NCBI GenBank assembly: GCA_002269645.1
Contig: NIVC01001666.1
Coordinates: forward strand, 62,001-126,000
Direction of reading: 5' to 3'
Length of the DNA: 64,000 nucleotides
Origin: Macrostomum lignano
Taxonomy: Eukaryota
The notes under the pieces are model-generated. The model had not been told where the DNA came from. It did not search any database and saw only the letters and a list, made by a program, of their open reading frames with translations. Positions 6,201 to 59,056 of this stretch are shown in pieces. Both the position numbers and the translations under genes were made by a program. Numbering within the stretch: the first letter of the stretch is position 1; every line of letters begins with the position of its first letter.

Positions 6201-8746
6201 GGAAGAATCTCACTAATGAAATGATGAGATCACTGATGAGATCCCACCGGAAGAATTTCACCCATGAGATCCCACCGGAAGAATCTCACTAATGAAATGA
6301 TGAGATCACTGATGAGATCCCACCGGAAGAATCTCACCAATGAGATCCCACCGGAAGAATCTCATGAGATCCCACCGGAAGAATCTCATGAGATCCCACC
6401 TAAGAATCTCACCCATGAGATCCCACCAAAAGAATCTCACCCATGAGATCCCACCGGAGACTGGCAACTCACATAGGGAATATCCTTCCACATCACCCCG
6501 ATAGGCGGCGAGTTCTCGGCGGCGCCCCGCTGCCGGAACTCTAGCCGGATGGAGGCGTTGCCAAACACTGGCGCATTGGTGGTGTGGTTGGCCTCCAGGA
6601 TGCCGTAGACACCGAAGGCGAACTCCGACAGCCGCTGCGGCATGGTGATGTTCACCGAGATCATGCTGGTGATGGTGTTGAAGAACACCAAGAAGCTCCG
6701 CTCGGTGACGAAGGCCTCCCTGGTGCAGCGAACCTTCCAGCTGCCGTGGTTGCTGGTGTCCGCCAGCTGGTAGCTCAACTCGATGAAGCCTTTGGCATTG
6801 TTCCTGGGTGATAGCCAGCGCCTAACGGAGACGTTCTTCGAGTCGACCACCTCGATGGAGGTGAAGACGCGATTCTTCACCATCAGGTTGGACTCGTAGG
6901 GGAAGACGCGGAAACGGACAATGTCTCCCATAGCGTAGATGGGCTTGGAGAACTGGATGAAGGCTGAGAACAGTCTGGGCTCGTAGATGATCTCCGTTCG
7001 GTTGTAGAATACCAGGCCGCCCAGAGTCTTCACTGAGCCTTCCACGTGGATGTTGTAGGTTCCAGTTGGCGTGTTCTCCGGGATCTGGCGGTTTGCAACG
7101 GCAGCGGGTACTGTTTGGTTGGTTAATTGTTGCTTTCGGAAGCAGAAAGTATTGCGGGTCAATGGTAACTAGGGTAGCGGCTGCCCACTGAAGGACCCGT
7201 GGATGGCGGCGGCCCACCGAAAGACCCGTGGATGGCGGCAGCCCACTGAAGGACCCGTGGGTGGTAGCGGCCCATTGAAGGACCCGAGGCTGGCAGCGGC
7301 CCATTGAAGGACCCGAGGATGGCAGCGGCCCATTGAAGGACCCGTGGGTGGCGACGGCCCATTGAAGGACCCGCGATTGCAGCGGACCATTGAAGGACCC
7401 GTGGGTGGTAGCGGCCCACTGAAGGACCCGTGGGTGGCGACGGCCCATTGAAGGACCCGAGGATGGCAGCGGCCCATTGAAGGACCCGTGGGTGGCGACG
7501 GCCCATTGAAGGACCCGCGATTGCAGCGGACCATTGAAGGACCCGTGGGTGGTAGCGGCCCACTGAAGGACCCGTGGGTGGCGACGGCCCATTGAAGGAC
7601 CCGTGGGTGGCGACGGCCCATTGAAGGACCCGTGGGTGGCGACGGCCCATTGAAGGACCCGCGATTGCAGCGGACCATTGAAGGACCCGTGGGTGGTAGC
7701 GGCCCACTGAAGGACCCGTGGGTGGCGACGGCCCATTGAAGGACCCGTGGGTGGCGACGGCCCATTGAAGGACCCGTGATTGCAGCGGCCCACTGAAGGA
7801 CCCGTGGGTGGCGACGGCCCATTGAAGGACCGTGATTGCAGCGGCCCATTGAAGGACCCGTGGGTGGCGACGGCCCATTGAAGGACCCGTGATTGCAGCG
7901 GCCCACTGAAGGACCCGTGGGTGGCGACGGCCCATTGAAGGACCGTGATTGCAGCGGCCCACTGAAGGACCCGTGGGTGGCGACGGCCCATTGAAGGACC
8001 GTGATTGCAGCGGCCCACTGAAGGACCCGTGGGTGGCGGCGCCGCAGCCGAAAAACAGCTGTCACTTTTTCTAACTTTTTTCCATCACTCCGAATCCGGA
8101 AAAGGTGGCTGAGCGGTAAGAGTACACTCGGCTGATAGCTGGGACACGTGCCAACAAGAATCGGGGCCATTGGATTCAGTCGGGGTCAACGGCTCGGCTA
8201 GGAGGGGTCACTTCCGGGTTCTTCCGGGTCGAAGTATCACAGTGCCAGAAAAGGTCAAACAGCTGGGGCTTTAAAGGTCATACCCTGACGCGAATCAGGC
8301 GCGAAGCAGCTCGAGTGAATGTCTCTTCAGCGAAGGCGTACTCGGTCTCGGCTACGCCGGAGCCGGGCTCGTTCAGTCGACGCACCGACACGCGAAACGT
8401 GAGACTGTCGTAGAGCATTCGGAACACGGTGGCGCTGACCCGAAACTCCTGCTCAGGTCGGATCTTTCTAGGCACCAGCACTAAATAGGTCCTGCCGAGT
8501 TGATAATATAGTAAATTAGTGAACAGGTATGGTCGATAAACAATTAGTTAAAGTTATAACTGATAAGATAAGAGCCGCCCACCCAACTGCACACGAGCCC
8601 TTATCTCCCTTAATAATTTCTTACGGAGTCGGCGGCAATTCCATACTGGTAGCCGGGACCGCCTGCTGTCCCCCGGCGCCGGCCAGGAGGCAGCAGAATA
8701 TTGTCGATAACAGCAGCAGCGGAACGTCGAAGGATGCCGCGGCCAT
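238..8746 (-). CDS. Mcr: Macroglobulin complement-related protein (Mcr/TEP6-like; alpha-2-macroglobulin/CD109 family), 3' end beyond the left edge of the window
   Basis: Manual GT-AG join with compatible phases: 8746-8625, 8491-8284, 7084-6473, 5741-5508, 4975-4262, 3913-3718, 3392-3149, 2915-2675, 1806-1558, 1293-238. Signal peptide MAAASFDVPLLLLSTIFCCLLAGAGG, then TYLVLVPRKIRP (MG1), FIQFSKPIYAMGDIVRFRV (MG2), an LDLa module, the A2M middle domain and an alpha-barrel with GSGES at the thioester position and STFLTAF. Confidence 0.88.
1885..2640. repeat. Minisatellite ~35 bp (ggatccctaacaacccggatcccatatttccccaa), Mcr intron 8
   Basis: About 20 tandem copies. Confidence 0.95.
2941..3095. repeat. 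Minisatellite 22 bp (gtgtctactgggactgtctacc), Mcr intron 7
   Basis: Tandem copies. Confidence 0.9.
3149..3392 (-). CDS. Mcr exon 7 encoding an LDL-receptor class A module (not visible in the ORF track)
   Basis: Translates as TCNETLNPDRAFPCYAGSPDECYGYRHICDGKLDCNTGVDEMNCDR; the CDGxxDCxxGxDExxC LDLa signature is intact; splice phases 1 and 2 match the neighbouring exons. Confidence 0.9.
3420..3690. repeat. AT-rich degenerate repeat (aaagtacaccaagtacttttcaatgg), Mcr intron 6
   Basis: Tandem copies. Confidence 0.85.
3935..4200. repeat. Degenerate (gggattt)n tract, Mcr intron 5
   Basis: Short-period degenerate repeat. Confidence 0.75.
5028..5497. repeat. Minisatellite 24 bp (gggattcgggatcatctacagttt), Mcr intron 4
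   Basis: About 19 near-identical copies; produces spurious ORFs. Confidence 0.95.
5990..6460. repeat. Compound repeat (gagatcccaccggaagaatctcac...), Mcr intron 3
   Basis: Tandem copies with higher-order units. Confidence 0.9.
7175..8035. repeat. Minisatellite 29 bp (ggcccattgaaggacccgtgggtggcgac), Mcr intron 2
   Basis: About 30 copies. Confidence 0.95.
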
Positions 8747-9834: not shown

Positions 9835-10372
9835 ACTGAACTGTGGGTCTGGGATGCTGGAGGAGTGAACTGGGATCTGCGCTGCCGGAGCGAACTGGGA
9901 TCTGGGATGCCGGAGGAGTGAACTGGGATCTGGGATGACGGAGCGAACTTGGATCTGGGATGCTGGAGGAGTGAACTGGGATCTGGGATGATGCAGGAGT
10001 GAACTGGGATCTGGTATGCTGGAGGAGTGAACTGGGATCTGGGATCATGCAGGAGTGAACTGGGATCTGGGATGCTGGAGGAGTGAACTGGGATCTGGGA
10101 TCATGCAGGAGTGAACTGGGATCTGGGATCATGCAGGAGTGAACTGGGATCTGGTATGCTGGAGGAGTGAACTGGGATCTGGGATGCTGAAGAAGTGAAC
10201 TGGGATGCTGGAGGAGTGAATTGGGATCTGGGATGCTGGAGGAGTGAACTGGGATCTGGGATGCTGGAGGAGTGAACTGGGATCTGGGATGATGCAGGAG
10301 TGAACTGGGATCTGGGATGATGCAGGAGTGAACTGGGATCTGGGATGCTGGAGGAGTGAACTTGGATCTGGA
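9835..10372. repeat. Minisatellite 28 bp (gggatctgggatgctggaggagtgaact) between eIF5 and Mcr
   Basis: Tandem copies. Confidence 0.95.
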
Positions 10373-10821: not shown

Positions 10822-13800
10822 TCAGATGTTATCAATATCCACGTCCGAGTCCGGCTGCTCTTCTTCAACTCGGCCTCCGTTGGATGGCCGAACCTGCCGC
10901 GAACTCTTAGTGGAGCCGTTGCCGTTAATCTTCTCTTTCAAGTGTCCAGCCTCCTTATTGTTCTCCTCATCTTCCTCATCATCCTCGCTGGATGACTCTT
11001 CGTCCGCAGTTTGCAACCAGTTGATGAAGGGCTGCGACAGCTCGTGGATGCTGCGGCTAAGCTTCCGGTCACCGGAGTAGCGCTTGCTCGGCTGCGGGTT
11101 TGGGAATGAAAATGGATGGGAGGATAAACTGATTGAGACTTTGATAATAATTGCGACAGTTCACCCTGTTATTGATTAATTGCAGTACTTATCAGGACTC
11201 ATTGGTGTTTCAAGATCACATGCCCCCAGTAATGACTAGGGTCATAGGCCTGGACACTTGTAAATAGTTTTTCATCATTATTTGTTTCTGTTGAACATGT
11301 GACAAAATGGAAGATTACTAAAGTTGCCAGTCAGGACTCACAGGTGTTTAATATCATGACCAAATTAGATTCATAGGCCTGGACACTTGTAGAGATTTCA
11401 TCATGTGTGCAACTCTTCTGCTCAATAGTCAGGATTGATAATTGCCGGGGCGATTCAGAGATGATTTTACAGAGTGATTCAGAGATGATTGAATAAAGTG
11501 ATTCAGAGATGATTTTACAGAGTGATTCAGAGATGATTGAATAAAGTGATTCAGAGATGATTTTACAGAGTGATTCAGAGATGATTGTAAAGAGTGATTC
11601 AGAGATGATTTTACAGAGTGATTCAGAGATGATTGTAAAGAGTGATTCAGAGATGATTTTACAGAGTGATTCAGAGATGATTTTACAGAGTGATTCAGAG
11701 ATGATTGTAAAGAGTGATTCAGAGATGATTGTAAAGAGTGATTCAGAGATGATTGTAAAGAGTGATTCAGAGATGATTTTACAGAGTGATTCAGAGATGA
11801 TTTTACAGAGTGATTCAGAGATGATTTTACAGAGTGATTCAGAGATGATTTTACAGAGTGATTCAGAGATGATTTTACAGAGTGATTCAGAGATGATTTT
11901 ACAGAGTGATTCAGAAATGATTGTAAAGAGTGATTCAGAGATGATTGAATAGAGTGATTCAGAGATGATTTTACAGAGTGATTCAGAGATGATTGTAAAG
12001 AGTGATTCAGAGGTGATTGTAAAGAGTGATTCAGAGATGATTTTACAGAGTGATTCAGAGATGATTGTAAAGAGTGATTCAGAGATGATTTTACAGAGTG
12101 ATTCAGAGATGATTTTACAGAGTGATTCAGAGATGATTTTACAGAGTGATTCAGAGATGATTGTAAAGAGTGATTCAGAGATGATTGTAAAGAGTGATTC
12201 AGAGATGATTGTAAAGAGTGATTCAGAGATGATTTTACAGAGTGATTCAGAGATGATTTTACAGAGTGATTCAGAGATGATTTTACAGAGTGATTCAGAA
12301 ATGATTGTAAAGAGTGATTCAGAGATGATTGAATAGAGTGATTCAGAGATGATTTTACAGAGTGATTCAGAGATGATTGTAAAGAGTGATTCAGAGGTGA
12401 TTTTACAGAGTGATTCAGAGATGATTCAGAGACAATGCTACTATTTTAAACTCTCAGCAATGATCGGTCAGAGAGATTCCCGAATAGTTCTATTGTACAA
12501 AAGAAATTGAATGATTTGCAAAGCGAACAACAAAAAAACGCACCCCCTTGGCGGCCCACTCGATCAGGGTCTCCTCGGACAGCAGATCGGCCGAATAGAA
12601 GGCATTGAGCAAGTTAGGAATCCGTTTAGCATCCAGCAGGCTGTCCCGGAACCTGGCAATCAAAGTCTCCACCGCGCCCATCAGATATTTCTGAGCCCGA
12701 CGATTCTTGTCGCCGCCAACAAAAGCCAGGAACACCGGACGGTAAGTCTTGGCGATGTCCGACACCAGAGTGGCCGGCGAATCGAGCAGCACTTCAACAA
12801 CAACCAGCACGGCTTTGTCGCGAATGTCCAGACGCTCGGCTTCAAGCACCAGTTCGCCGGGACTGAGCTGGCCAGATGACAGGCGCTCAGTAAGGAACTT
12901 GTGGAACCGGTCCGCCCGGTCTTGGGGCGTCAGCTCCAGCATCTCGTCCGTTACAATCAGTCGCTGGATGGAGGCCGGCAGCTCATCCGCAGCTGCCCGC
13001 TGCTGCTCTCTATCATTCTCATCGTCTCCGCCCTCCCATTCGCCATCACTATCGAAGTCGTCCCCGCCTACGCCGGCGCCGTTTAAGTCGTCAGCATCTC
13101 CGTCGTCAGGATGATGATTGCTCTCCTCTCCGCTGTTGCCGCCTTCCGGGCTGCGATCGGCGGTGGTGCCGCCGTTAGCGCCGCCGCGCCTCCTCCGAGT
13201 ACCGGCGGCTCCCCGGCCGCCTTTGCCGCTAGAGGCGCCAGCGGCCAGAGCCAGGCCGGTCTCGTCCGGCGGATTCTTTAAAATGAACTGCGCAGTTCGG
13301 CCATTGTCCGGGACGGGGGCCAGGCAGCCGCAGGCTTTGCATTTGGCCAATAGTTCGCCGCCTTGTTTGCCGCGAGTGCGCACAATCAGATCGGTCTCGG
13401 GGTTCTCGCATTTCGAGCACAGAACGTACCTGGGATGGCGATCGATTGTGCTTGTGCTGTTGTGATGTGAATCACTCGATTGTGCCTTCATTGTGACAAG
13501 TCGATTCAATTTAAGACCTCACTGCTAAATCGTACCACTAAAAAAGGGTGTCTACTGAACCTAAAACCTAACCCAAAACTTTAATCCTAAGCTGAAACGT
13601 AACCCAAAACCTAACCTTGACGTAAAATCGAAAACCCAACCTAAAACCTAGCCCTAAACCACAGATACTAGAATAGCTAGATGGACCACTCTGGTCTGGC
13701 TAATTAGTAAAACAGCTTTCTACTTTCAGTTCAGTAGCAAAGAAGAATACATAAGCTGTTTTTAAGAATAAAGGCAGCTGAAATGACTTTGATAAGTTTA

Positions 13801-14747
13801 GAAGCCCAAGCTTGCAGGCGTAAACAACTTGCTAATTGGTTCAGCAATAATGTACATTAGCCAGTCCAAAGAAAATGTACATGGCAGATTTGGACTGGAA
13901 TTCTGAGAAAGGCAATAAAAATTGGGGCGGGCGGGGGTAGTGTGGAAAGGCGCGGTTGGAGGGTTCAAGTTGGGGGGGGGGGGGGGGGTTAGAGTAGGGG
14001 TGTTCGGGTCGGGTTTTGGTACCGGTTTCGGGGTTCGGGGTAAGGTGTTCGGGTCGGGTATCGGGTACGGGGTTAGGTGTTCGGGTTTTCGGGTTCAATG
14101 GAAAAATAAACTTTAGCTATTTTAAAAATACATTTCTCCTAATGTCGTTATGTACCGCTTTAAAGTATAAAAAGGTGAATATTTAAACTTCAAAAACCGA
14201 AAAAATGCTTGAATTTAGGTTTTCAATTACAAATGTAGGGTTCTACGGATGAAGTCTATGAATCTATGGATTCTGGCTGGCCGCTGGACTATGCTTGTGG
14301 ATTTAAAAAATCACAACTTAAACCCAAGTTGGTAAACATTTGGATAAGTGGATGTTAAAGTCAATGCTAAGATCTTAAGAATGAGGAGTCAAATTATAGA
14401 GAGGAGAGTAAAGACTTTGCTAGCTAATGACAAAGTTAGTGTAGAACAAATCAAGCAACTTACTTGCGTATGAAAGCATCCAAAATAGTCTGCAACTTGT
14501 CGCAATCGTGCGCCCCATTCACTATGAACCGTTCGTTCTTCTGGTCGAATTGAATCTGGGCGCCAAGTTCGGCGCCAAAAAATTTAGTTGGATAGATTGG
14601 CGGCCGGCCAAGGGCTTTGGCAACCTCGGGCATGTTCACTATAACAGTTTTAATGCCGTTACCCTTGCCCTCGACTTTGGCAATCAGTCTGGGCATCTTG
14701 TAGCGATAGAAGTCGTCGCTAACCTCTCGATTCACGTTCAGAGCCAT
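10822..14747 (-). CDS. EIF5: Eukaryotic translation initiation factor 5
   Basis: Join 14747-14464, 13429-12544, 11091-10822 (1440 nt, 479 aa). N-terminus [34 protein letters not shown], zinc-ribbon [12 protein letters not shown]2 domain [10 protein letters not shown], terminal DVDIDNI. Confidence 0.97.
11187..11283 (-). ncRNA. Box C/D snoRNA copy B, SNORD66-like, in eIF5 intron 2
   Basis: C box ATGATGA (11278-11272), identical guide plus D' block (21-nt perfect match to copy A at 11242-11262), D box CTGA (11195-11192). Terminal stem weak; ends approximate. Confidence 0.72.
11322..11414 (-). ncRNA. Box C/D snoRNA copy A, SNORD66 (HBII-142)-like, in eIF5 intron 2
   Basis: Sense to host. C box ATGATGA (11404-11398), guide AGTGTCCAGGCC (11387-11376), T + D' ATGA, degenerate C' ATGATA, D box CTGA (11334-11331), 6-bp terminal stem (11322-11327 with 11409-11414). 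Confidence 0.8.
11452..12430. repeat. Minisatellite 24 bp (agagtgattcagagatgattttac / gtaa variants), eIF5 intron 2
   Basis: About 40 copies. Confidence 0.97.
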
Positions 14748-23988: not shown

Positions 23989-50007
<26,019 letters not shown>

Positions 50008-54349: not shown

Positions 54350-56560
54350 GAGAAGGAAAAGGGAGAGGGTGAGAGGGTGAGATGGTGAGGGTGAGAGGAA
54401 GAGGGTGAGAGGGAGAGAGTGAGAGGGAGAGGATCAGAGGGAGAGGGTGAGAGGGAGACGATCAGAGGGAGAGGGTGAGGGAGAGAGGTCGAGAACGAGA
54501 GGGCGAGAGGGAGAGGGTGAGAGCGAGAGGATGAGAAGGAGAGGGTGAAATGGAGAGGATCAGAGGGAGACGATCAGAGGGAGAGGATGAGAGGGAGAGG
54601 GTGAGAAAGAGAGGGTGAGACTGAGAAAGTGAGAGGTAGAGGGTGAGAGGAAGAGGGTGAGAGCGAGAGGATGAAAGGCAGAGAGTGAGAGGGTGAGAGG
54701 GTGGGAGGGAGAGGGTGAGAGGGTGAGAGGGAGAGGGTGAGACGGAGAAAGTGAGAGGCAGAGGGTGAGAGCGAGAGGATGAGAGGGTGAGAGGGTGAGA
54801 GGGAGAGGGTGAGAGGGAGAGGATCAGAGGGAGAGGGTGAGAGGCAGAGGGTGAGAGCGAGAGGATGAAAGGCAGAGAGTGAGAGGGTGAGAGGGTGAGA
54901 GGGAGAGGGTGAGAGGCAAAGGGTGAGAGGGAGAGGGTGAGGGAGAGAGGTCGAGAACGAGAGGGCGAGAGGGAGAGAATCAGAGGATGAGGGTGAGAGG
55001 GTGAGAGGGAGAGGGTGAGACGGAGAAAGTGAGAGGCAGAGGGTGAGAGGAAGAGGGTGAGAGGGAGAGGGTGAGAGGAAGAGGGTGAGGGAGAGGGTGA
55101 GAGGAAGAGGGTGAGAGGAAGAGGGTGAGAGGGAGAGGGTGAGAGGGAGAGGGTGAGAGGCAAAGGGTGAGAGGGAGAGGATCAGAGGCAGATGGTGAGA
55201 GGCAGAGGGTGAGAGCGAGAGGATGAGAGGGTGAGAGGTTGAGAGGGAGAGGGTGAGAGGGAGAAGATCAGAGGCAGATGGTGAGAGGCAGAGGGTGAGA
55301 GGCAGAGGGTGAGAGCGAGAGGATGAGAAGGAGAGGGTGAAATGGAGAGGATCAGAGGGAGACGATCAGAGGGAGAGGATGAGAGGGAGAGGGTGAGAAA
55401 GAGAGGGTGAGACTGAGAAAGTGAGAGGTAGAGGGTGAGAGGAAGAGGGTGAGAGGAAGAGGGTGAGAGGAAGAGGGTGAGAGGGAGAGGGTGAGAGGGA
55501 GAGGGTGAGAGGGAGAGGATCAGAGGGAGAGGGTGAGAGGGAGACGATCAGAGGGAGAGGGTGGGGGAGAGAGGTCAAGAACGAGAGGGCGAGAGGGAGA
55601 GAATCAGAGGATGAGGGTGAGAGGGGGAGCGGATTAGTTTTGATGGGTGGGTGCCTAAGACTTTCTGAAGCAGAATAGCTAGTGCGAGGCGAGGAAGTCA
55701 GGCATGTGCGGGGACGAAGCTCGGAGCTGAGACCGATGCACCTGCTGTGTCTGCACGCAGGCCGGCTCGGGCAGCAATCAGTAATCGTGTCTGGCGCCCC
55801 CTCGGACAGGAAGCGAAACTTGAATAGTCAGGACTCGAATTACCTGTTAATTGGCTGATAATTCTACCTGCTGATAGGCAGGTTGGAGATATTGGACTAG
55901 ATCTCTTTAACTGGGAAACTCGAAAGGAAGAGAATGGGGGAGAGGGAGAGAGGAGAGGGAGAGGGAAAGAGGGAGGAAGAGAGGAGAGGGAGGGGGAAAG
56001 GGAGAGAGGAGAGGGAGAGGAGAGGGAGAGGAGAGGGAGAGGAGAGGGAGAGGGAGAGGGAGAGAGATGAGAAAGGGAGAGAGAAGAGAGGGAGATAGGA
56101 GAGGAAGAGGCAGAGGGAAGAGAGAGAGAGAGGAGAGAGTCTCGAAAGGGAGAGAGGAGAGAAGAGAGGGGGAGAGGAGAGGGAGAGGAGAGGAGAGGGA
56201 GAGAGGAGAGAGAGAGGAGAGGGAGAGGAGAGGGAGAGGAGAGGGAGAGGGAGAGGGAGAGGGAGAGGGAGAGGGAGAGGGAGAGGGAGAGGGAGAGGGA
56301 GAGGGAGAGGGAGAGGGAGAGGGAGAGGGAGAGGGAGAGAGGAGAGAAGGAGAGATGAGAGGGAGAGGGAGAGGGAGAGAGGAGAGAAGGAGAGATGAGA
56401 GGGATAGAGGAGAGGGTGAGAGGAGAGGGAGAGGAGAGGAGAGGGAGAGAGGAGAGGGATAGAGGAGACGGAGAGGAGAGGGAGAGAGGAGAGGGATAGA
56501 GGAGAGGGAGAGGAGAGGGAGAGAGGAGAGGGATAGAGGAGAGGGAGAGAGGAGAGGGAG
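54350..56560. repeat. Two polypurine tracts (54350-55628 gagggtgaga-type; 55925-56560 gagagg-type)
   Basis: Nearly pure A/G on the plus strand; internal ~140-bp duplication (about 54521 and 55313). Confidence 0.95.
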
Positions 56561-57168: not shown

Positions 57169-57339
57169 TGGCTGTCTGTCTCAGATTTAACGGTGTCAAT
57201 TTTCAGCCAGATAGAGAGATGTGCTTTCTATGATAATAATGTATAGCGGTATTTACTGCCCTCAAACTAATCTGCTGAGTTGTATGCTGCTTGGGTGTGG
57301 CCACATTTTATATAGATGGGGCGCGTCTTCAAGGGCGCT

Positions 57340-59056
57340 ATTTCATTTGAGTAGGGGTGCCATTTCATTTGAGTAGGGGTGCCATTTCATTTGAGTAGGG
57401 GCGCCATTTCATTTGAGTAGGGGTGCCATTTCATTTGAGTAGGGGCGCCATTTTAATAGAACAGGGTTGCCATTTCATTTGAGTAGGGGCGCCATTTCAA
57501 TAGAGTAGGGGTGCCATTTCATTTGAGTAGGGGTGTCATTTCATTTGAGTAGGGGTGCCATTTCATTTGAGTAGGGGTGCCATTTCATTTGAGTAGGGGT
57601 GCCATTTCAATAGAACAGGGGTGCCATTTCATTTGAGTAGGGGCGTCATTTCAGTTGAGTAGGGGTGCCATTTCATTTGAGTAGGGGTGCCATTTCATTT
57701 GAGTAGGAGCGCCATTTCAATAGAGTAGGGGCGCCATTTCAATTAAGTAGGGGCGCCATTTCATTTGAGTAGGGGCGCCATTTCATTTGAGTAGGGGCGC
57801 CATTTCATTTGAGTAGGGGCGCCATTTTATTTGAGTAGAGGTGCCATTTCATTTGAGTAGGGGCGCCATTTCATTTGAGTAGGGGCGCCATTTTATTTGA
57901 GTAGAGGTGCCATTTCATTTGAGTAGGGGTGCCATTTCATTTGAGTAGGGGTGCCATTTCATTTGAGTAGGGGTGCCATTTCATTTGAGTAGGGGTGCCA
58001 TTTCATTTGAGTAGGGGTGCCATTTCATTTGAGTAGGGGTGCCATTTCATTTGAGTAGGGGCGCCATTTAATTTGAGTAGGGGCGCCATTTCATTTGAGT
58101 AGGGGTGCCATTTCATTTGAGTAGGGGTGCCATTTCATTTGAGTAGGGGTGCCATTTTATTTGAGTAGAGGTGCCATTTCATTTGAGTAGGGATGCCATT
58201 TCATTTGAGTAGGGGTGCCATTTCATTTGAGTAGGGGTGCCATTTCATTTGAGTAGGGGTGCCATTTCATTTGAGTAGGGGTGCCATTTCATTTGAGTAG
58301 GGGTGCCATTTCATTTGAGTAGGGGTGCCATTTCAATAGAACAGGGGTGCCATTTCATTTGAGTAGGGGCGTCATTTCAGTTGAGTAGGGGTGCCATTTC
58401 ATTTGAGTAGGGGTGCCATTTCATTTGAGTAGGAGCGCCATTTCAATAGAGTAGGGGCGCCATTTCAATTAAGTAGGGGCGCCATTTCATTTGAGTAGGG
58501 GCGCCATTTCATTTGAGTAGGGGCGCCATTTTATTTGAGTAGGGGTGCCATTTCATTTGAGTAGGGGTGCCATTTCATTTGAGTAGGGGCGCCATTTCAT
58601 TTGAGTAGGGGTGCCATTTCATTTGAGTAGGGGTGCCATTTCATTTGAGTAGGGGTGCCATTTCATTTGAGTAGGGGTGCCATTTCATTTGAGTAGGGGT
58701 GCCATTTCATTTGAGTAGGGGTGCCATTTCATTTGAGTAGGGGTGCCATTTCATTTGAGTAGGGGTGCCATTTCATTTGAGTAGGGGTGCCATTTCATTT
58801 GAGTAGGGGTGCCATTTCATTTGAGTAGGGGTGCCATTTCATTTGAGTAGGGGTGCCATTTCATTTGAGTAGGGGCGCCATTTCATTTGAGTAGGGGTGC
58901 CATTTCATTTGAGTAGGGGTGCCATTTCATTTGAGTAGGGGTGCCATTTCATTTGAGTAGGGGTGCCATTTCATTTGAGTAGGGGTGCCATTTCATTTGA
59001 GTAGGGGTGCCATTTCATTTGAGTAGGGGTGCCATTTCATTTGAGTAGGGGTGCCA
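57340..59056. repeat. Satellite 22 bp (ccatttcatttgagtaggggtg), about 78 copies
   Basis: Highly homogeneous array; a variant block recurs after 726 bp. Confidence 0.98.

What the first reader, a model, noticed from the sequence alone, without database searches (positions are those of the whole stretch)
11187..11414. Hidden tandem pair of SNORD66-like C/D snoRNAs in eIF5 intron 2
Seen: two ~90-nt units sense to eIF5, each ATGATGA...guide-T-ATGA(D')...C'-like...CTGA. They share a perfect 21-nt block containing the guide AGTGTCCAGGCC while their spacers diverge; copy A has a 6-bp terminal stem. Established (from memory, verify): vertebrate SNORD66/HBII-142 uses GTGTCTGGGCCA-CTGA to direct 18S Cm1272 within GGCCCGGACAC and is hosted by EIF4G1; vertebrate EIF5 hosts SNORA28. 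By the D+5 rule the target here is the second C of GGCC, the same register. Inference: the guide has moved between translation-factor host genes, and two copies share one intron ~100-320 nt from the 3' splice site. Perfect pairing predicts that this species' 18S reads GGCCUGGACACU.
Basis: partly seen in the sequence, partly recalled or inferred. Interest (0 to 1): 0.7.

Follow-up and report, generated by a model that had tools for sequence, protein, structure and literature searches.

The report
Two box C/D snoRNAs in flatworm eIF5 intron
The last intron of the Macrostomum lignano (flatworm) eIF5 gene holds two diverged copies of an unannotated box C/D small nucleolar RNA that probably directs ribose methylation of a conserved cytidine in helix 32 of 18S rRNA, the site guided by SNORD66 in humans. 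This is an ordinary new member of a well-known RNA class.

Summary
On the minus strand, sense to eIF5, two units sit in the 1452-nt last coding intron (12543..11092). Each has ATGATGA (C), a 17-nt antisense element, ATGA (D'), a degenerate C' (RTGATMT) and CTGA (D).

The boxes and the 17-nt guide are 100% identical between the copies. Spacers and flanks are at chance identity, which points to selection on both copies. Unit A has a significant terminal stem of 8 bp plus 2 more; unit B has none.

The window is Macrostomum lignano (eIF5 99% identical to the UniRef entry). The D' guide pairs with 12 contiguous Watson-Crick base pairs to 18S helix 32 in 20 environmental 18S genes that read GGCCUGGACACU. 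The D'+5 rule selects the conserved last C of the helix 32 5' strand, which appears to be the human C1272 position guided by SNORD66.

Not supported: membership of the Rfam SNORD66 family (no hit even at E<=10), and any demonstrated "move" of the guide between host genes. M. lignano 18S itself could not be obtained, so the target remains a prediction. The second (D) guide is conserved 14/17 but has no rRNA target that I could find.

Verdict: very likely genuine C/D snoRNA genes, a functional analogue of SNORD66, a new member of a known kind, of modest interest.

The parts
11092..12543 (-). Host intron of eIF5 (between coding exons 2 and 3; GT at 12543-12542, AG at 11093-11092, phase 0). It also holds a 24-nt minisatellite at 11452-12426.
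   Evidence: ORFs; 99% match to M. lignano eIF5 P0001 with junction ...EWAAKG|PSKRY; tandem array.
11320..11416 (-). Unit A, complete predicted C/D snoRNA including terminal stem (97 nt).
11409..11416 (-). Unit A 5' arm of terminal stem (AGAGUUGC).
   Evidence: MFE fold; duplex -10.5 kcal/mol, p about 0.001 against shuffles.
11398..11404 (-). Unit A box C, ATGATGA.
11375..11391 (-). Unit A D' antisense element TACAAGTGTCCAGGCCT. G11379 is the fifth nucleotide upstream of D'.
   Evidence: Identical in both copies; 12 contiguous Watson-Crick pairs with 18S helix 32 GGCCUGGACACU.
11371..11374 (-). Unit A box D', ATGA.
11351..11357 (-). Unit A box C' (degenerate), ATGATAT.
   Evidence: shares RTGATMT with unit B.
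11335..11350 (-). Unit A D-guide region TAAACACCTGTGAGTC; target unknown.
   Evidence: 14/17 identical to unit B; no rRNA target found.
11331..11334 (-). Unit A box D, CTGA.
11320..11327 (-). Unit A 3' arm of terminal stem (GCAACUUU).
11192..11278 (-). Unit B, predicted C/D snoRNA core from box C to box D (87 nt); no terminal stem.
11272..11278 (-). Unit B box C, ATGATGA.
11246..11262 (-). Unit B D' antisense element TACAAGTGTCCAGGCCT. G11250 is the fifth nucleotide upstream of D'.
11242..11245 (-). Unit B box D', ATGA.
11213..11219 (-). Unit B box C' (degenerate), GTGATCT.
11196..11212 (-). Unit B D-guide region TGAAACACCAATGAGTC; target unknown.
11192..11195 (-). Unit B box D, CTGA; 100 nt upstream of the 3' splice site.

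Best explanation
Two paralogous intron-encoded box C/D snoRNA genes lie in the last coding intron of Macrostomum lignano eIF5.

Proposed mechanism (inferred from how intronic C/D snoRNAs are known to work, not shown here):
1. The eIF5 pre-mRNA is spliced and the lariat debranched.
2. Exonucleases trim the intron down to the two snoRNPs, which are protected by Snu13/15.5K, Nop56, Nop58 and fibrillarin bound to the C/D and C'/D' motifs.
3. In each snoRNP the 12-17 nt just upstream of D' (5'-UACAAGUGUCCAGGCCU-3') pairs with 18S rRNA at the helix 32/helix 33 junction (predicted 5'-AGGCCUGGACACUUGUA-3').
4. Fibrillarin 2'-O-methylates the C opposite the fifth guide nucleotide. This is the conserved last C of the helix 32 5' strand, the position of human Cm1272, whose guide is SNORD66.

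Shown: the boxes, their spacing, unit A's stem, the conservation pattern, and 12-bp complementarity to real 18S genes carrying the U variant.
Inferred: expression, processing, the sequence of M. lignano 18S, and the methylation itself.

Secondary inference: unit A (D box 239 nt from the 3' splice site, strong terminal stem) and unit B (100 nt from it, no stem) fit the two assembly modes I recall for mammalian intronic C/D snoRNAs: stem-dependent, and splicing- or position-dependent.
For: - Anatomy: both units have RUGAUGA ... guide-N-AUGA ... RUGAUMU ... guide-CUGA, with cores of 74 and 87 nt on the sense strand of an intron.
- Duplication pattern: C, D', D and the 17-nt guide are 100% identical. 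Spacers differ in length and sequence and flanks are unrelated. The 21-mer has chance expectation 0.01.
- Unit A's terminal stem scores -10.5 kcal/mol, p about 0.001. Among all 19 C..D combinations on both strands of the 64 kb it is the best candidate.
- There is no stable overall fold (z = +0.35 and -0.38). I would expect this for a C/D snoRNA and not for a hairpin precursor.
- Target: 12 contiguous Watson-Crick pairs with 18S GGCCUGGACACU in 20 of 20 environmental 18S genes found with a pattern anchored on helix 33. L021 scores 1086 bits as SSU_rRNA_eukarya.
- In the Rfam consensus the targeted C is the conserved upper-case C that ends the helix 32 5' strand. The following base (c/U) is unpaired and variable.
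- Human C1272 lies in helix 32 and is guided by SNORD66. C1272 and U1288 are 16 nt apart in human, planarian and zebrafish tables, matching the spacing from the targeted C to the first U of GGAUUG.
- The host is a highly expressed translation factor gene, which I recall as the usual kind of snoRNA host. Human EIF5 hosts SNORA28.
Against: - No Rfam family matches, not even weakly for SNORD66.
- No expression data are available.
- M. lignano 18S was not obtainable. If it reads GGCCCGG as in human, an A-C mismatch would sit next to the target nucleotide.
- Unit B lacks a terminal stem.
- D' is AUGA rather than CUGA, and both C' boxes are degenerate.
- Planarian RiboMeth-seq did not list the equivalent C1212 among its methylated sites, although that survey detected only 24 sites in 18S.
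- No orthologous locus from another Macrostomum species or from the M. lignano paralogue could be fetched, so there is no cross-species covariation test.
Confidence: 0.72

Rival explanations
1. Genuine, expressed C/D snoRNAs whose real substrate is not the helix 32 cytidine. The target could be another rRNA site specific to flatworms, an snRNA, a tRNA or an mRNA, or the RNAs could act as chaperones or in processing. The conserved D-guide, rather than or as well as the D' guide, could be the functional element.
For: M. lignano 18S is unverified. The D-guide is conserved 14/17 between copies, which suggests it also does something, yet it has no target in complete rDNA units of other eukaryotes. 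The planarian survey did not report methylation at the equivalent C.
Against: I estimate the chance of a 12-nt perfect match to rRNA that lands in register on a site known to be methylated in vertebrates at about 1e-5 per guide (about 7 kb of rRNA / 4^12, times about 110 known sites / 7000 nt). The whole 17 nt next to D' is invariant between copies.
Confidence: 0.13
2. Only unit A is a working snoRNA gene. Unit B is a non-processed or decaying duplicate that survives in the intron.
For: Unit B has no terminal stem, and its distal flank pairing is no better than shuffles (p=0.29). Its D'-C' spacer is longer.
Against: All four boxes and the 17-nt guide of unit B are intact while the neutral parts have diverged to chance level. 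A dead copy of that age should have accumulated changes there too. Its D box is 100 nt from the 3' splice site, close to the position I recall as allowing stem-independent, splicing-coupled assembly in mammals.
Confidence: 0.1
3. Not snoRNAs at all. The units are a duplicated intronic segment, a repeat or mobile-element fragment, or a cis-regulatory or splicing element, and the box-like motifs and rRNA complementarity are fortuitous.
For: The window is extremely rich in repeats (56 TRF rows) and a 975-bp minisatellite adjoins unit A. There is no Rfam hit.
Against: Only two copies exist in 64 kb, even allowing 3 mismatches. Conservation coincides exactly with the C, D', C', D boxes and the guide, not with a contiguous repeat. 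Unit A's stem brackets C and D precisely. The guide is complementary in register to a known methylation site.
Confidence: 0.05

Closest known systems
SNORD66 (HBII-142), vertebrate box C/D snoRNA in an EIF4G1 intron, guide for 18S Cm1272
   Same: Same RNA class. Same predicted target nucleotide, the conserved C at the end of the helix 32 5' strand. One unpaired spacer nucleotide lies between guide and box. The host is a translation initiation factor gene.
   Different: No detectable sequence or covariance-model similarity. The host is eIF5, not eIF4G. There are two copies in one intron. The guide has A where the vertebrate guide pairs with C or G-U, implying a U in the flatworm 18S.
Intronic snoRNA gene clusters with several snoRNAs per intron (from memory: described in Drosophila melanogaster and common in plants)
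   Same: More than one C/D snoRNA is released from a single intron, and tandem paralogues share a guide.
   Different: Here there are only two copies and the organism is a flatworm. The 'one snoRNA per intron' habit of vertebrates is not followed. This rests on my own knowledge; the Drosophila paper I opened has no passage on this.
SNORA28 in human EIF5
   Same: The same host gene family carries an intronic snoRNA.
   Different: SNORA28 is an H/ACA pseudouridylation guide and is unrelated in class and target. No H/ACA family was detected in the window.

Membership tests
Box C/D snoRNA (class) | Box C RUGAUGA near the 5' end and box D CUGA near the 3' end, 60-120 nt apart | tested here: met
   ATGATGA and CTGA in both units; cores of 74 and 87 nt.
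Box C/D snoRNA (class) | Short terminal stem bringing C and D together (kink-turn context) | tested here: inconclusive
   Unit A: 8+2 bp, -10.5 kcal/mol, p about 0.001. Unit B: none next to the boxes, and the distal pairing is not significant.
Box C/D snoRNA (class) | Internal D' and C' boxes (often degenerate) | tested here: met
   D' = AUGA in both units. C' = AUGAUAU and GUGAUCU, sharing RUGAUMU.
Box C/D snoRNA (class) | At least 10 nt of antisense to rRNA or snRNA ending 1 nt from D or D', with the target opposite the fifth nucleotide | tested here: inconclusive
   12 contiguous Watson-Crick pairs to helix 32 of 20 environmental 18S genes, in register on the conserved C. The organism's own 18S could not be obtained.
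Box C/D snoRNA (class) | Stable 70-100-nt RNA bound by fibrillarin, Nop56, Nop58 and Snu13 | not testable with these tools
   No expression or RIP data are accessible.
Rfam SNORD66 family | Covariance-model score at or above the gathering threshold | tested here: not met
   No hit at gathering score. No SNORD66 hit at E<=10 on 801-nt and 246-nt queries.
Rfam SNORD66 family | Guide for 18S C1272 (helix 32) | tested here: inconclusive
   The register and the helix 32 position fit. The exact mapping to human numbering rests partly on my memory of the human 18S sequence, and M. lignano 18S is unknown.
Rfam SNORD66 family | Guide located upstream of box D; host gene EIF4G1 | tested here: not met
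   The guide is upstream of D' and the host is eIF5. EIF4G1 as host comes from PMC7072173. The D-box position of the vertebrate guide is recollection only.

The most novel reading that the evidence does not exclude
Methylation of the helix 32 cytidine (human Cm1272) would be an ancestral bilaterian modification. I know of no invertebrate record. The planarian paper's comparison table marks the site as not methylated in yeast or Xenopus, and the planarian study did not report the equivalent C as methylated. In flatworms the site would be served by a guide with no detectable homology to SNORD66: placed on the D' side, in a different translation-factor host gene, and kept as two copies in one intron. 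The two copies would use the two different snoRNP assembly routes, stem-dependent and splice-site-proximity-dependent. That would be a clean natural example of guide turnover with target conservation.
Probability: 0.35. Interest if true: 0.4.

Novelty: new member of a known kind. Interest (0 to 1): 0.25.

Why it matters
I found no description of snoRNAs for Macrostomum lignano (8 papers mention both terms and none appears, from its title and abstract, to catalogue them). Flatworm rRNA methylation has only one low-depth map.

If confirmed, the pair adds one guide-target assignment to a regeneration model organism. It would extend the known range of the Cm1272-equivalent site beyond vertebrates. 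It would also give a compact case of duplicated guides under selection in a single intron.

It does not change the understanding of how C/D snoRNAs work.

Tried and rejected
1. Rfam at gathering score on the whole window, and at E<=10 on 801 nt and 246 nt. Only chance-level partial hits driven by the C box appeared (SNORD73, SNORD81, SNORD5 in the minisatellite); no SNORD66.

2. Getting M. lignano 18S:
- Full-text search for the target and guide strings gave only irrelevant primer hits.
- A search on Macrostomum, 18S and rRNA depletion gave nothing usable.
- The planarian rRNA-depletion probe table does not cover the site.
- Planarian RiboMeth supplements hold no sequence, and the 18S score sheet is apparently truncated.
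- Scans of genome contigs and viral contigs for the 17-nt extended target were empty.
- The single metagenome scan gave 20 18S genes with the 12-nt target but none with the UUGU extension, and none attributable to flatworms.
- I considered searching the protein database with spurious ORFs translated from 18S. I rejected this: only 1-2 residues would be specific to the predicted target, 90% clustering would hide the variant, and hits could not be assigned to Macrostomum.

3. Comparative loci. The M. lignano paralogue P0004 is not on record. The closest relative, P0002, exists only as spliced transcripts. eIF5 genes of Lingula, Dreissena, Tribolium and Parasteatoda contain no such guide and no Rfam snoRNA.

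4. Target for the D-guide. There is none in 20 rDNA loci, which include two loci (L005, L013) carrying every SSU and LSU marker motif tested, and none elsewhere in the window. My first scanning script had a bug and returned nothing; it was replaced.

5. Hairpin or miRNA-like reading. Rejected because fold z-scores are about 0.

6. Plus-strand reading. Rejected because there is no C box in plus orientation and no ORF of at least 40 aa over the units.

Full report
**Organism and host gene**

The minus strand of window 10822-14747 encodes eIF5 in three coding exons. The concatenated product is 99% identical over its full length to a UniRef eIF5 of Macrostomum lignano (P0001). A second M. lignano paralogue is 64% identical, and Logan transcripts from unidentified samples, presumably related flatworms, are 63-69% identical. 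P0001 reads ...EWAAKG|PSKRY... across the junction. This fixes exon 2 as ending at 12544, the intron as 12543..11092 (gtgcgt...cccgcag, phase 0, 1452 nt) and exon 3 as starting at 11091. Most of the intron is a 24-nt minisatellite (11452-12426, 40.6 copies). The finding lies between that array and the 3' splice site.

**The observation**

On the minus strand there are two units.
- Unit A: stem arm 11416-11409, C ATGATGA 11404-11398, antisense element 11391-11375, D' ATGA 11374-11371, C' ATGATAT 11357-11351, second antisense region 11350-11335, D CTGA 11334-11331, stem arm 11327-11320.
- Unit B: C 11278-11272, antisense element 11262-11246, D' 11245-11242, C' GTGATCT 11219-11213, second antisense region 11212-11196, D 11195-11192.

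The shared 21-mer TACAAGTGTCCAGGCCTATGA occurs exactly twice in 64 kb even with 3 mismatches allowed. The chance expectation is 0.01.

Segment by segment, the boxes and the 17-nt guide are identical and the D-side antisense region is 14/17. The C-guide spacer is 4/9, the D'-C' spacer is 10/22 with a 9-nt length difference, and the flanks are 12/20, which is chance level for a gapped alignment. This is the signature of an old tandem duplication with purifying selection on exactly the parts a C/D snoRNP needs.

Unit A's flanks form an 8-bp stem plus two further pairs right next to C and D. The duplex is -10.5 kcal/mol against a shuffle mean of -3.0 +/- 1.9, and 1 of 1000 shuffles reached it. Of the 19 RTGATGA...CTGA combinations on both strands of the window it is the best candidate. 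Unit B has no such stem, and a 12-bp distal pairing of its flanks is not better than shuffles (p=0.29). Neither unit folds more stably than shuffled sequence, which argues against a hairpin precursor.

**Target**

The fifth nucleotide upstream of D' is G11379 in unit A and G11250 in unit B. It would pair with the second C of 5'-AGGCCUGGACACU-3'.

I could not obtain M. lignano 18S, so I asked whether that reading exists at the right place. One scan of JGI metagenome contigs for GGCCTGGACAC-N5-GGATTGACAG returned 20 contigs. All have ...GACUCAACAYGGGGAAACUYACCN-GGCCUGGACACU-.... Three were checked and are SSU rRNA (L021 at 1086 bits).

A guide-target scan found 12 contiguous Watson-Crick pairs at this site in all 20 and nothing comparable elsewhere in those rDNA units.

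In the Rfam eukaryotic SSU consensus the region reads CUuACCaGgcCcgGAcaccguaAGGAUUG. The targeted base is the conserved upper-case C that closes the 5' strand of helix 32. The next base (c in the consensus, U in the predicted flatworm sequence) is unpaired and variable. The following 'caccg' is the 5' strand of helix 33.

The literature places human 18S-C1272 in helix 32, guided by SNORD66 from an EIF4G1 intron. A cross-species table gives C1272 and U1288 as 16 nt apart in human (1272/1288), planarian (1212/1228) and zebrafish (1339/1355). That equals the distance from the targeted C to the first U of GGAUUG. The final step, that C1272 is precisely the second C of GGCC, rests on my recollection of the human 18S sequence counted from m1acp3-pseudouridine 1248.

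Because all 17 nt upstream of D' are invariant between copies, I predict that the M. lignano 18S reads AGGCCUGGACACUUGUA-GGAUUG. None of the 20 environmental sequences has the UUGU extension. Scans of GTDB genomes and IMG/VR for it were empty, as expected for those collections.

**Second guide**

The region upstream of D (AAACACC-UG/AA-UGAGUC) is conserved except for two adjacent bases. It has no convincing target in the 20 rDNA loci. Two of these (L005, L013) carry every SSU and LSU marker motif tested and so appear to span 18S through the sarcin-ricin loop of 28S. There is also no target elsewhere in the window.

Its last six bases are complementary to the universally conserved GACUCA of the helix 31 loop, about 22-27 nt upstream of the D' target. 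A 6-mer this close is expected by chance about 3% of the time (my estimate), so I record it as unexplained, not as a function.

**Family membership**

No Rfam family reaches its gathering score anywhere in the window. At E<=10 only partial matches driven by the C box appear, and never SNORD66.

The guide is on the D' side, whereas by recollection SNORD66's is on the D side, and the host differs. So the units work like SNORD66 (same predicted target) but cannot be filed as members of that family.

The idea that the guide 'moved' between translation-factor genes is untestable here. eIF5 genes of a brachiopod, a bivalve, a beetle and a spider contain neither this guide nor any Rfam snoRNA. The association with eIF5 is therefore not an old protostome feature. 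Human EIF5 hosts the unrelated H/ACA snoRNA SNORA28.

**Flatworm context**

The only flatworm RiboMeth-seq map (Schmidtea mediterranea, PMC11649923) aligns planarian C1212 with human C1272 but does not list it among its 10 fully or 14 partially methylated 18S sites. It does detect Um1228, equivalent to human Um1288. That survey recovered few of the conserved sites, so this is weak negative evidence, and planarians are distant from Macrostomum. The same table marks C1272 as methylated in human, mouse and zebrafish but not in yeast or Xenopus.

**Mechanism**

The most likely reading (0.72) is two functional intron-encoded C/D snoRNAs released from the spliced eIF5 intron, both guiding 2'-O-methylation of the helix 32 C through their D' guide.

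Unit A lies far from the 3' splice site (D box 239 nt away) and has a strong terminal stem. Unit B lies 100 nt from it and has none. This matches the two assembly modes I recall for mammalian intronic C/D snoRNAs (Hirose and Steitz; cited from memory). It is an inference.

Rivals:
- Real snoRNAs with another or an additional target (0.13).
- Only A functional (0.10).
- Fortuitous repeat (0.05).

**Verdict**

The decisive check is reading the species' own 18S, which is trivial outside this tool set. Interest 0.25.

Noticed in passing
window 11452-12426: A 24-nt minisatellite (GATTCAGAGATGATTTTACAGAGT, 40.6 copies, 93% matches) fills two thirds of the same eIF5 intron, immediately 5' of unit A in the transcript. 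Its GATGA and CAGA motifs produce a spurious weak SNORD5 hit on the plus strand.
   Followed up: partly
window 11335-11350 and 11196-11212 (minus strand): The D-side antisense regions of both units are conserved 14/17 (AAACACC..UGAGUC) but differ at two adjacent central bases, and no rRNA target was found. Their 3' hexamer UGAGUC is complementary to the universal GACUCA of the 18S helix 31 loop, about 22-27 nt upstream of the D' target. This could be accessory pairing or chance.
   Followed up: partly
window 1-64000: The whole window is unusually dense in minisatellite arrays (56 TRF rows with score >=200, periods of 13-40 nt, up to 91 copies). Examples are 57333-59056 (22 nt x 78), 35004-36173 (39 nt x 30) and 54360-55629 (14 nt x 91). 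No tRNA genes and no Rfam family at gathering score.
   Followed up: no
window 9837-10371: A 28-nt tandem array (19.5 copies) lies about 450 nt downstream of the eIF5 stop codon (CDS ends at 10822). It is probably in or just after the 3' UTR, and it generates long artefactual ORFs.
   Followed up: no
window 7172-8041: A 29-nt array (with 115- and 144-nt higher-order periods) is open in two frames for 333-398 aa (repeats of the type HGSFNGPSPPTGPSMGRRHPRVLQWA). It is unclear whether it codes for anything.
   Followed up: no
window 10822-14747 (eIF5 CDS) compared with P0001 and P0004: The window's eIF5 differs from the UniRef M. lignano entry at a few residues (for example R/C in ...FLTE[R/C]LSS and E/G in ...SEDD[E/G]EDE). 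A second M. lignano eIF5 is only 64% identical. This suggests allelic or duplicated copies. The other copies' introns could not be fetched to test conservation of the snoRNAs.
   Followed up: partly
L008 and L012 (metagenome contigs): Two of the 18S genes carrying the GGCCUGGACACU variant are extremely divergent (only about 225 bits against the eukaryotic SSU model over 1.2-1.4 kb). They come from unidentified fast-evolving eukaryotes.
   Followed up: no
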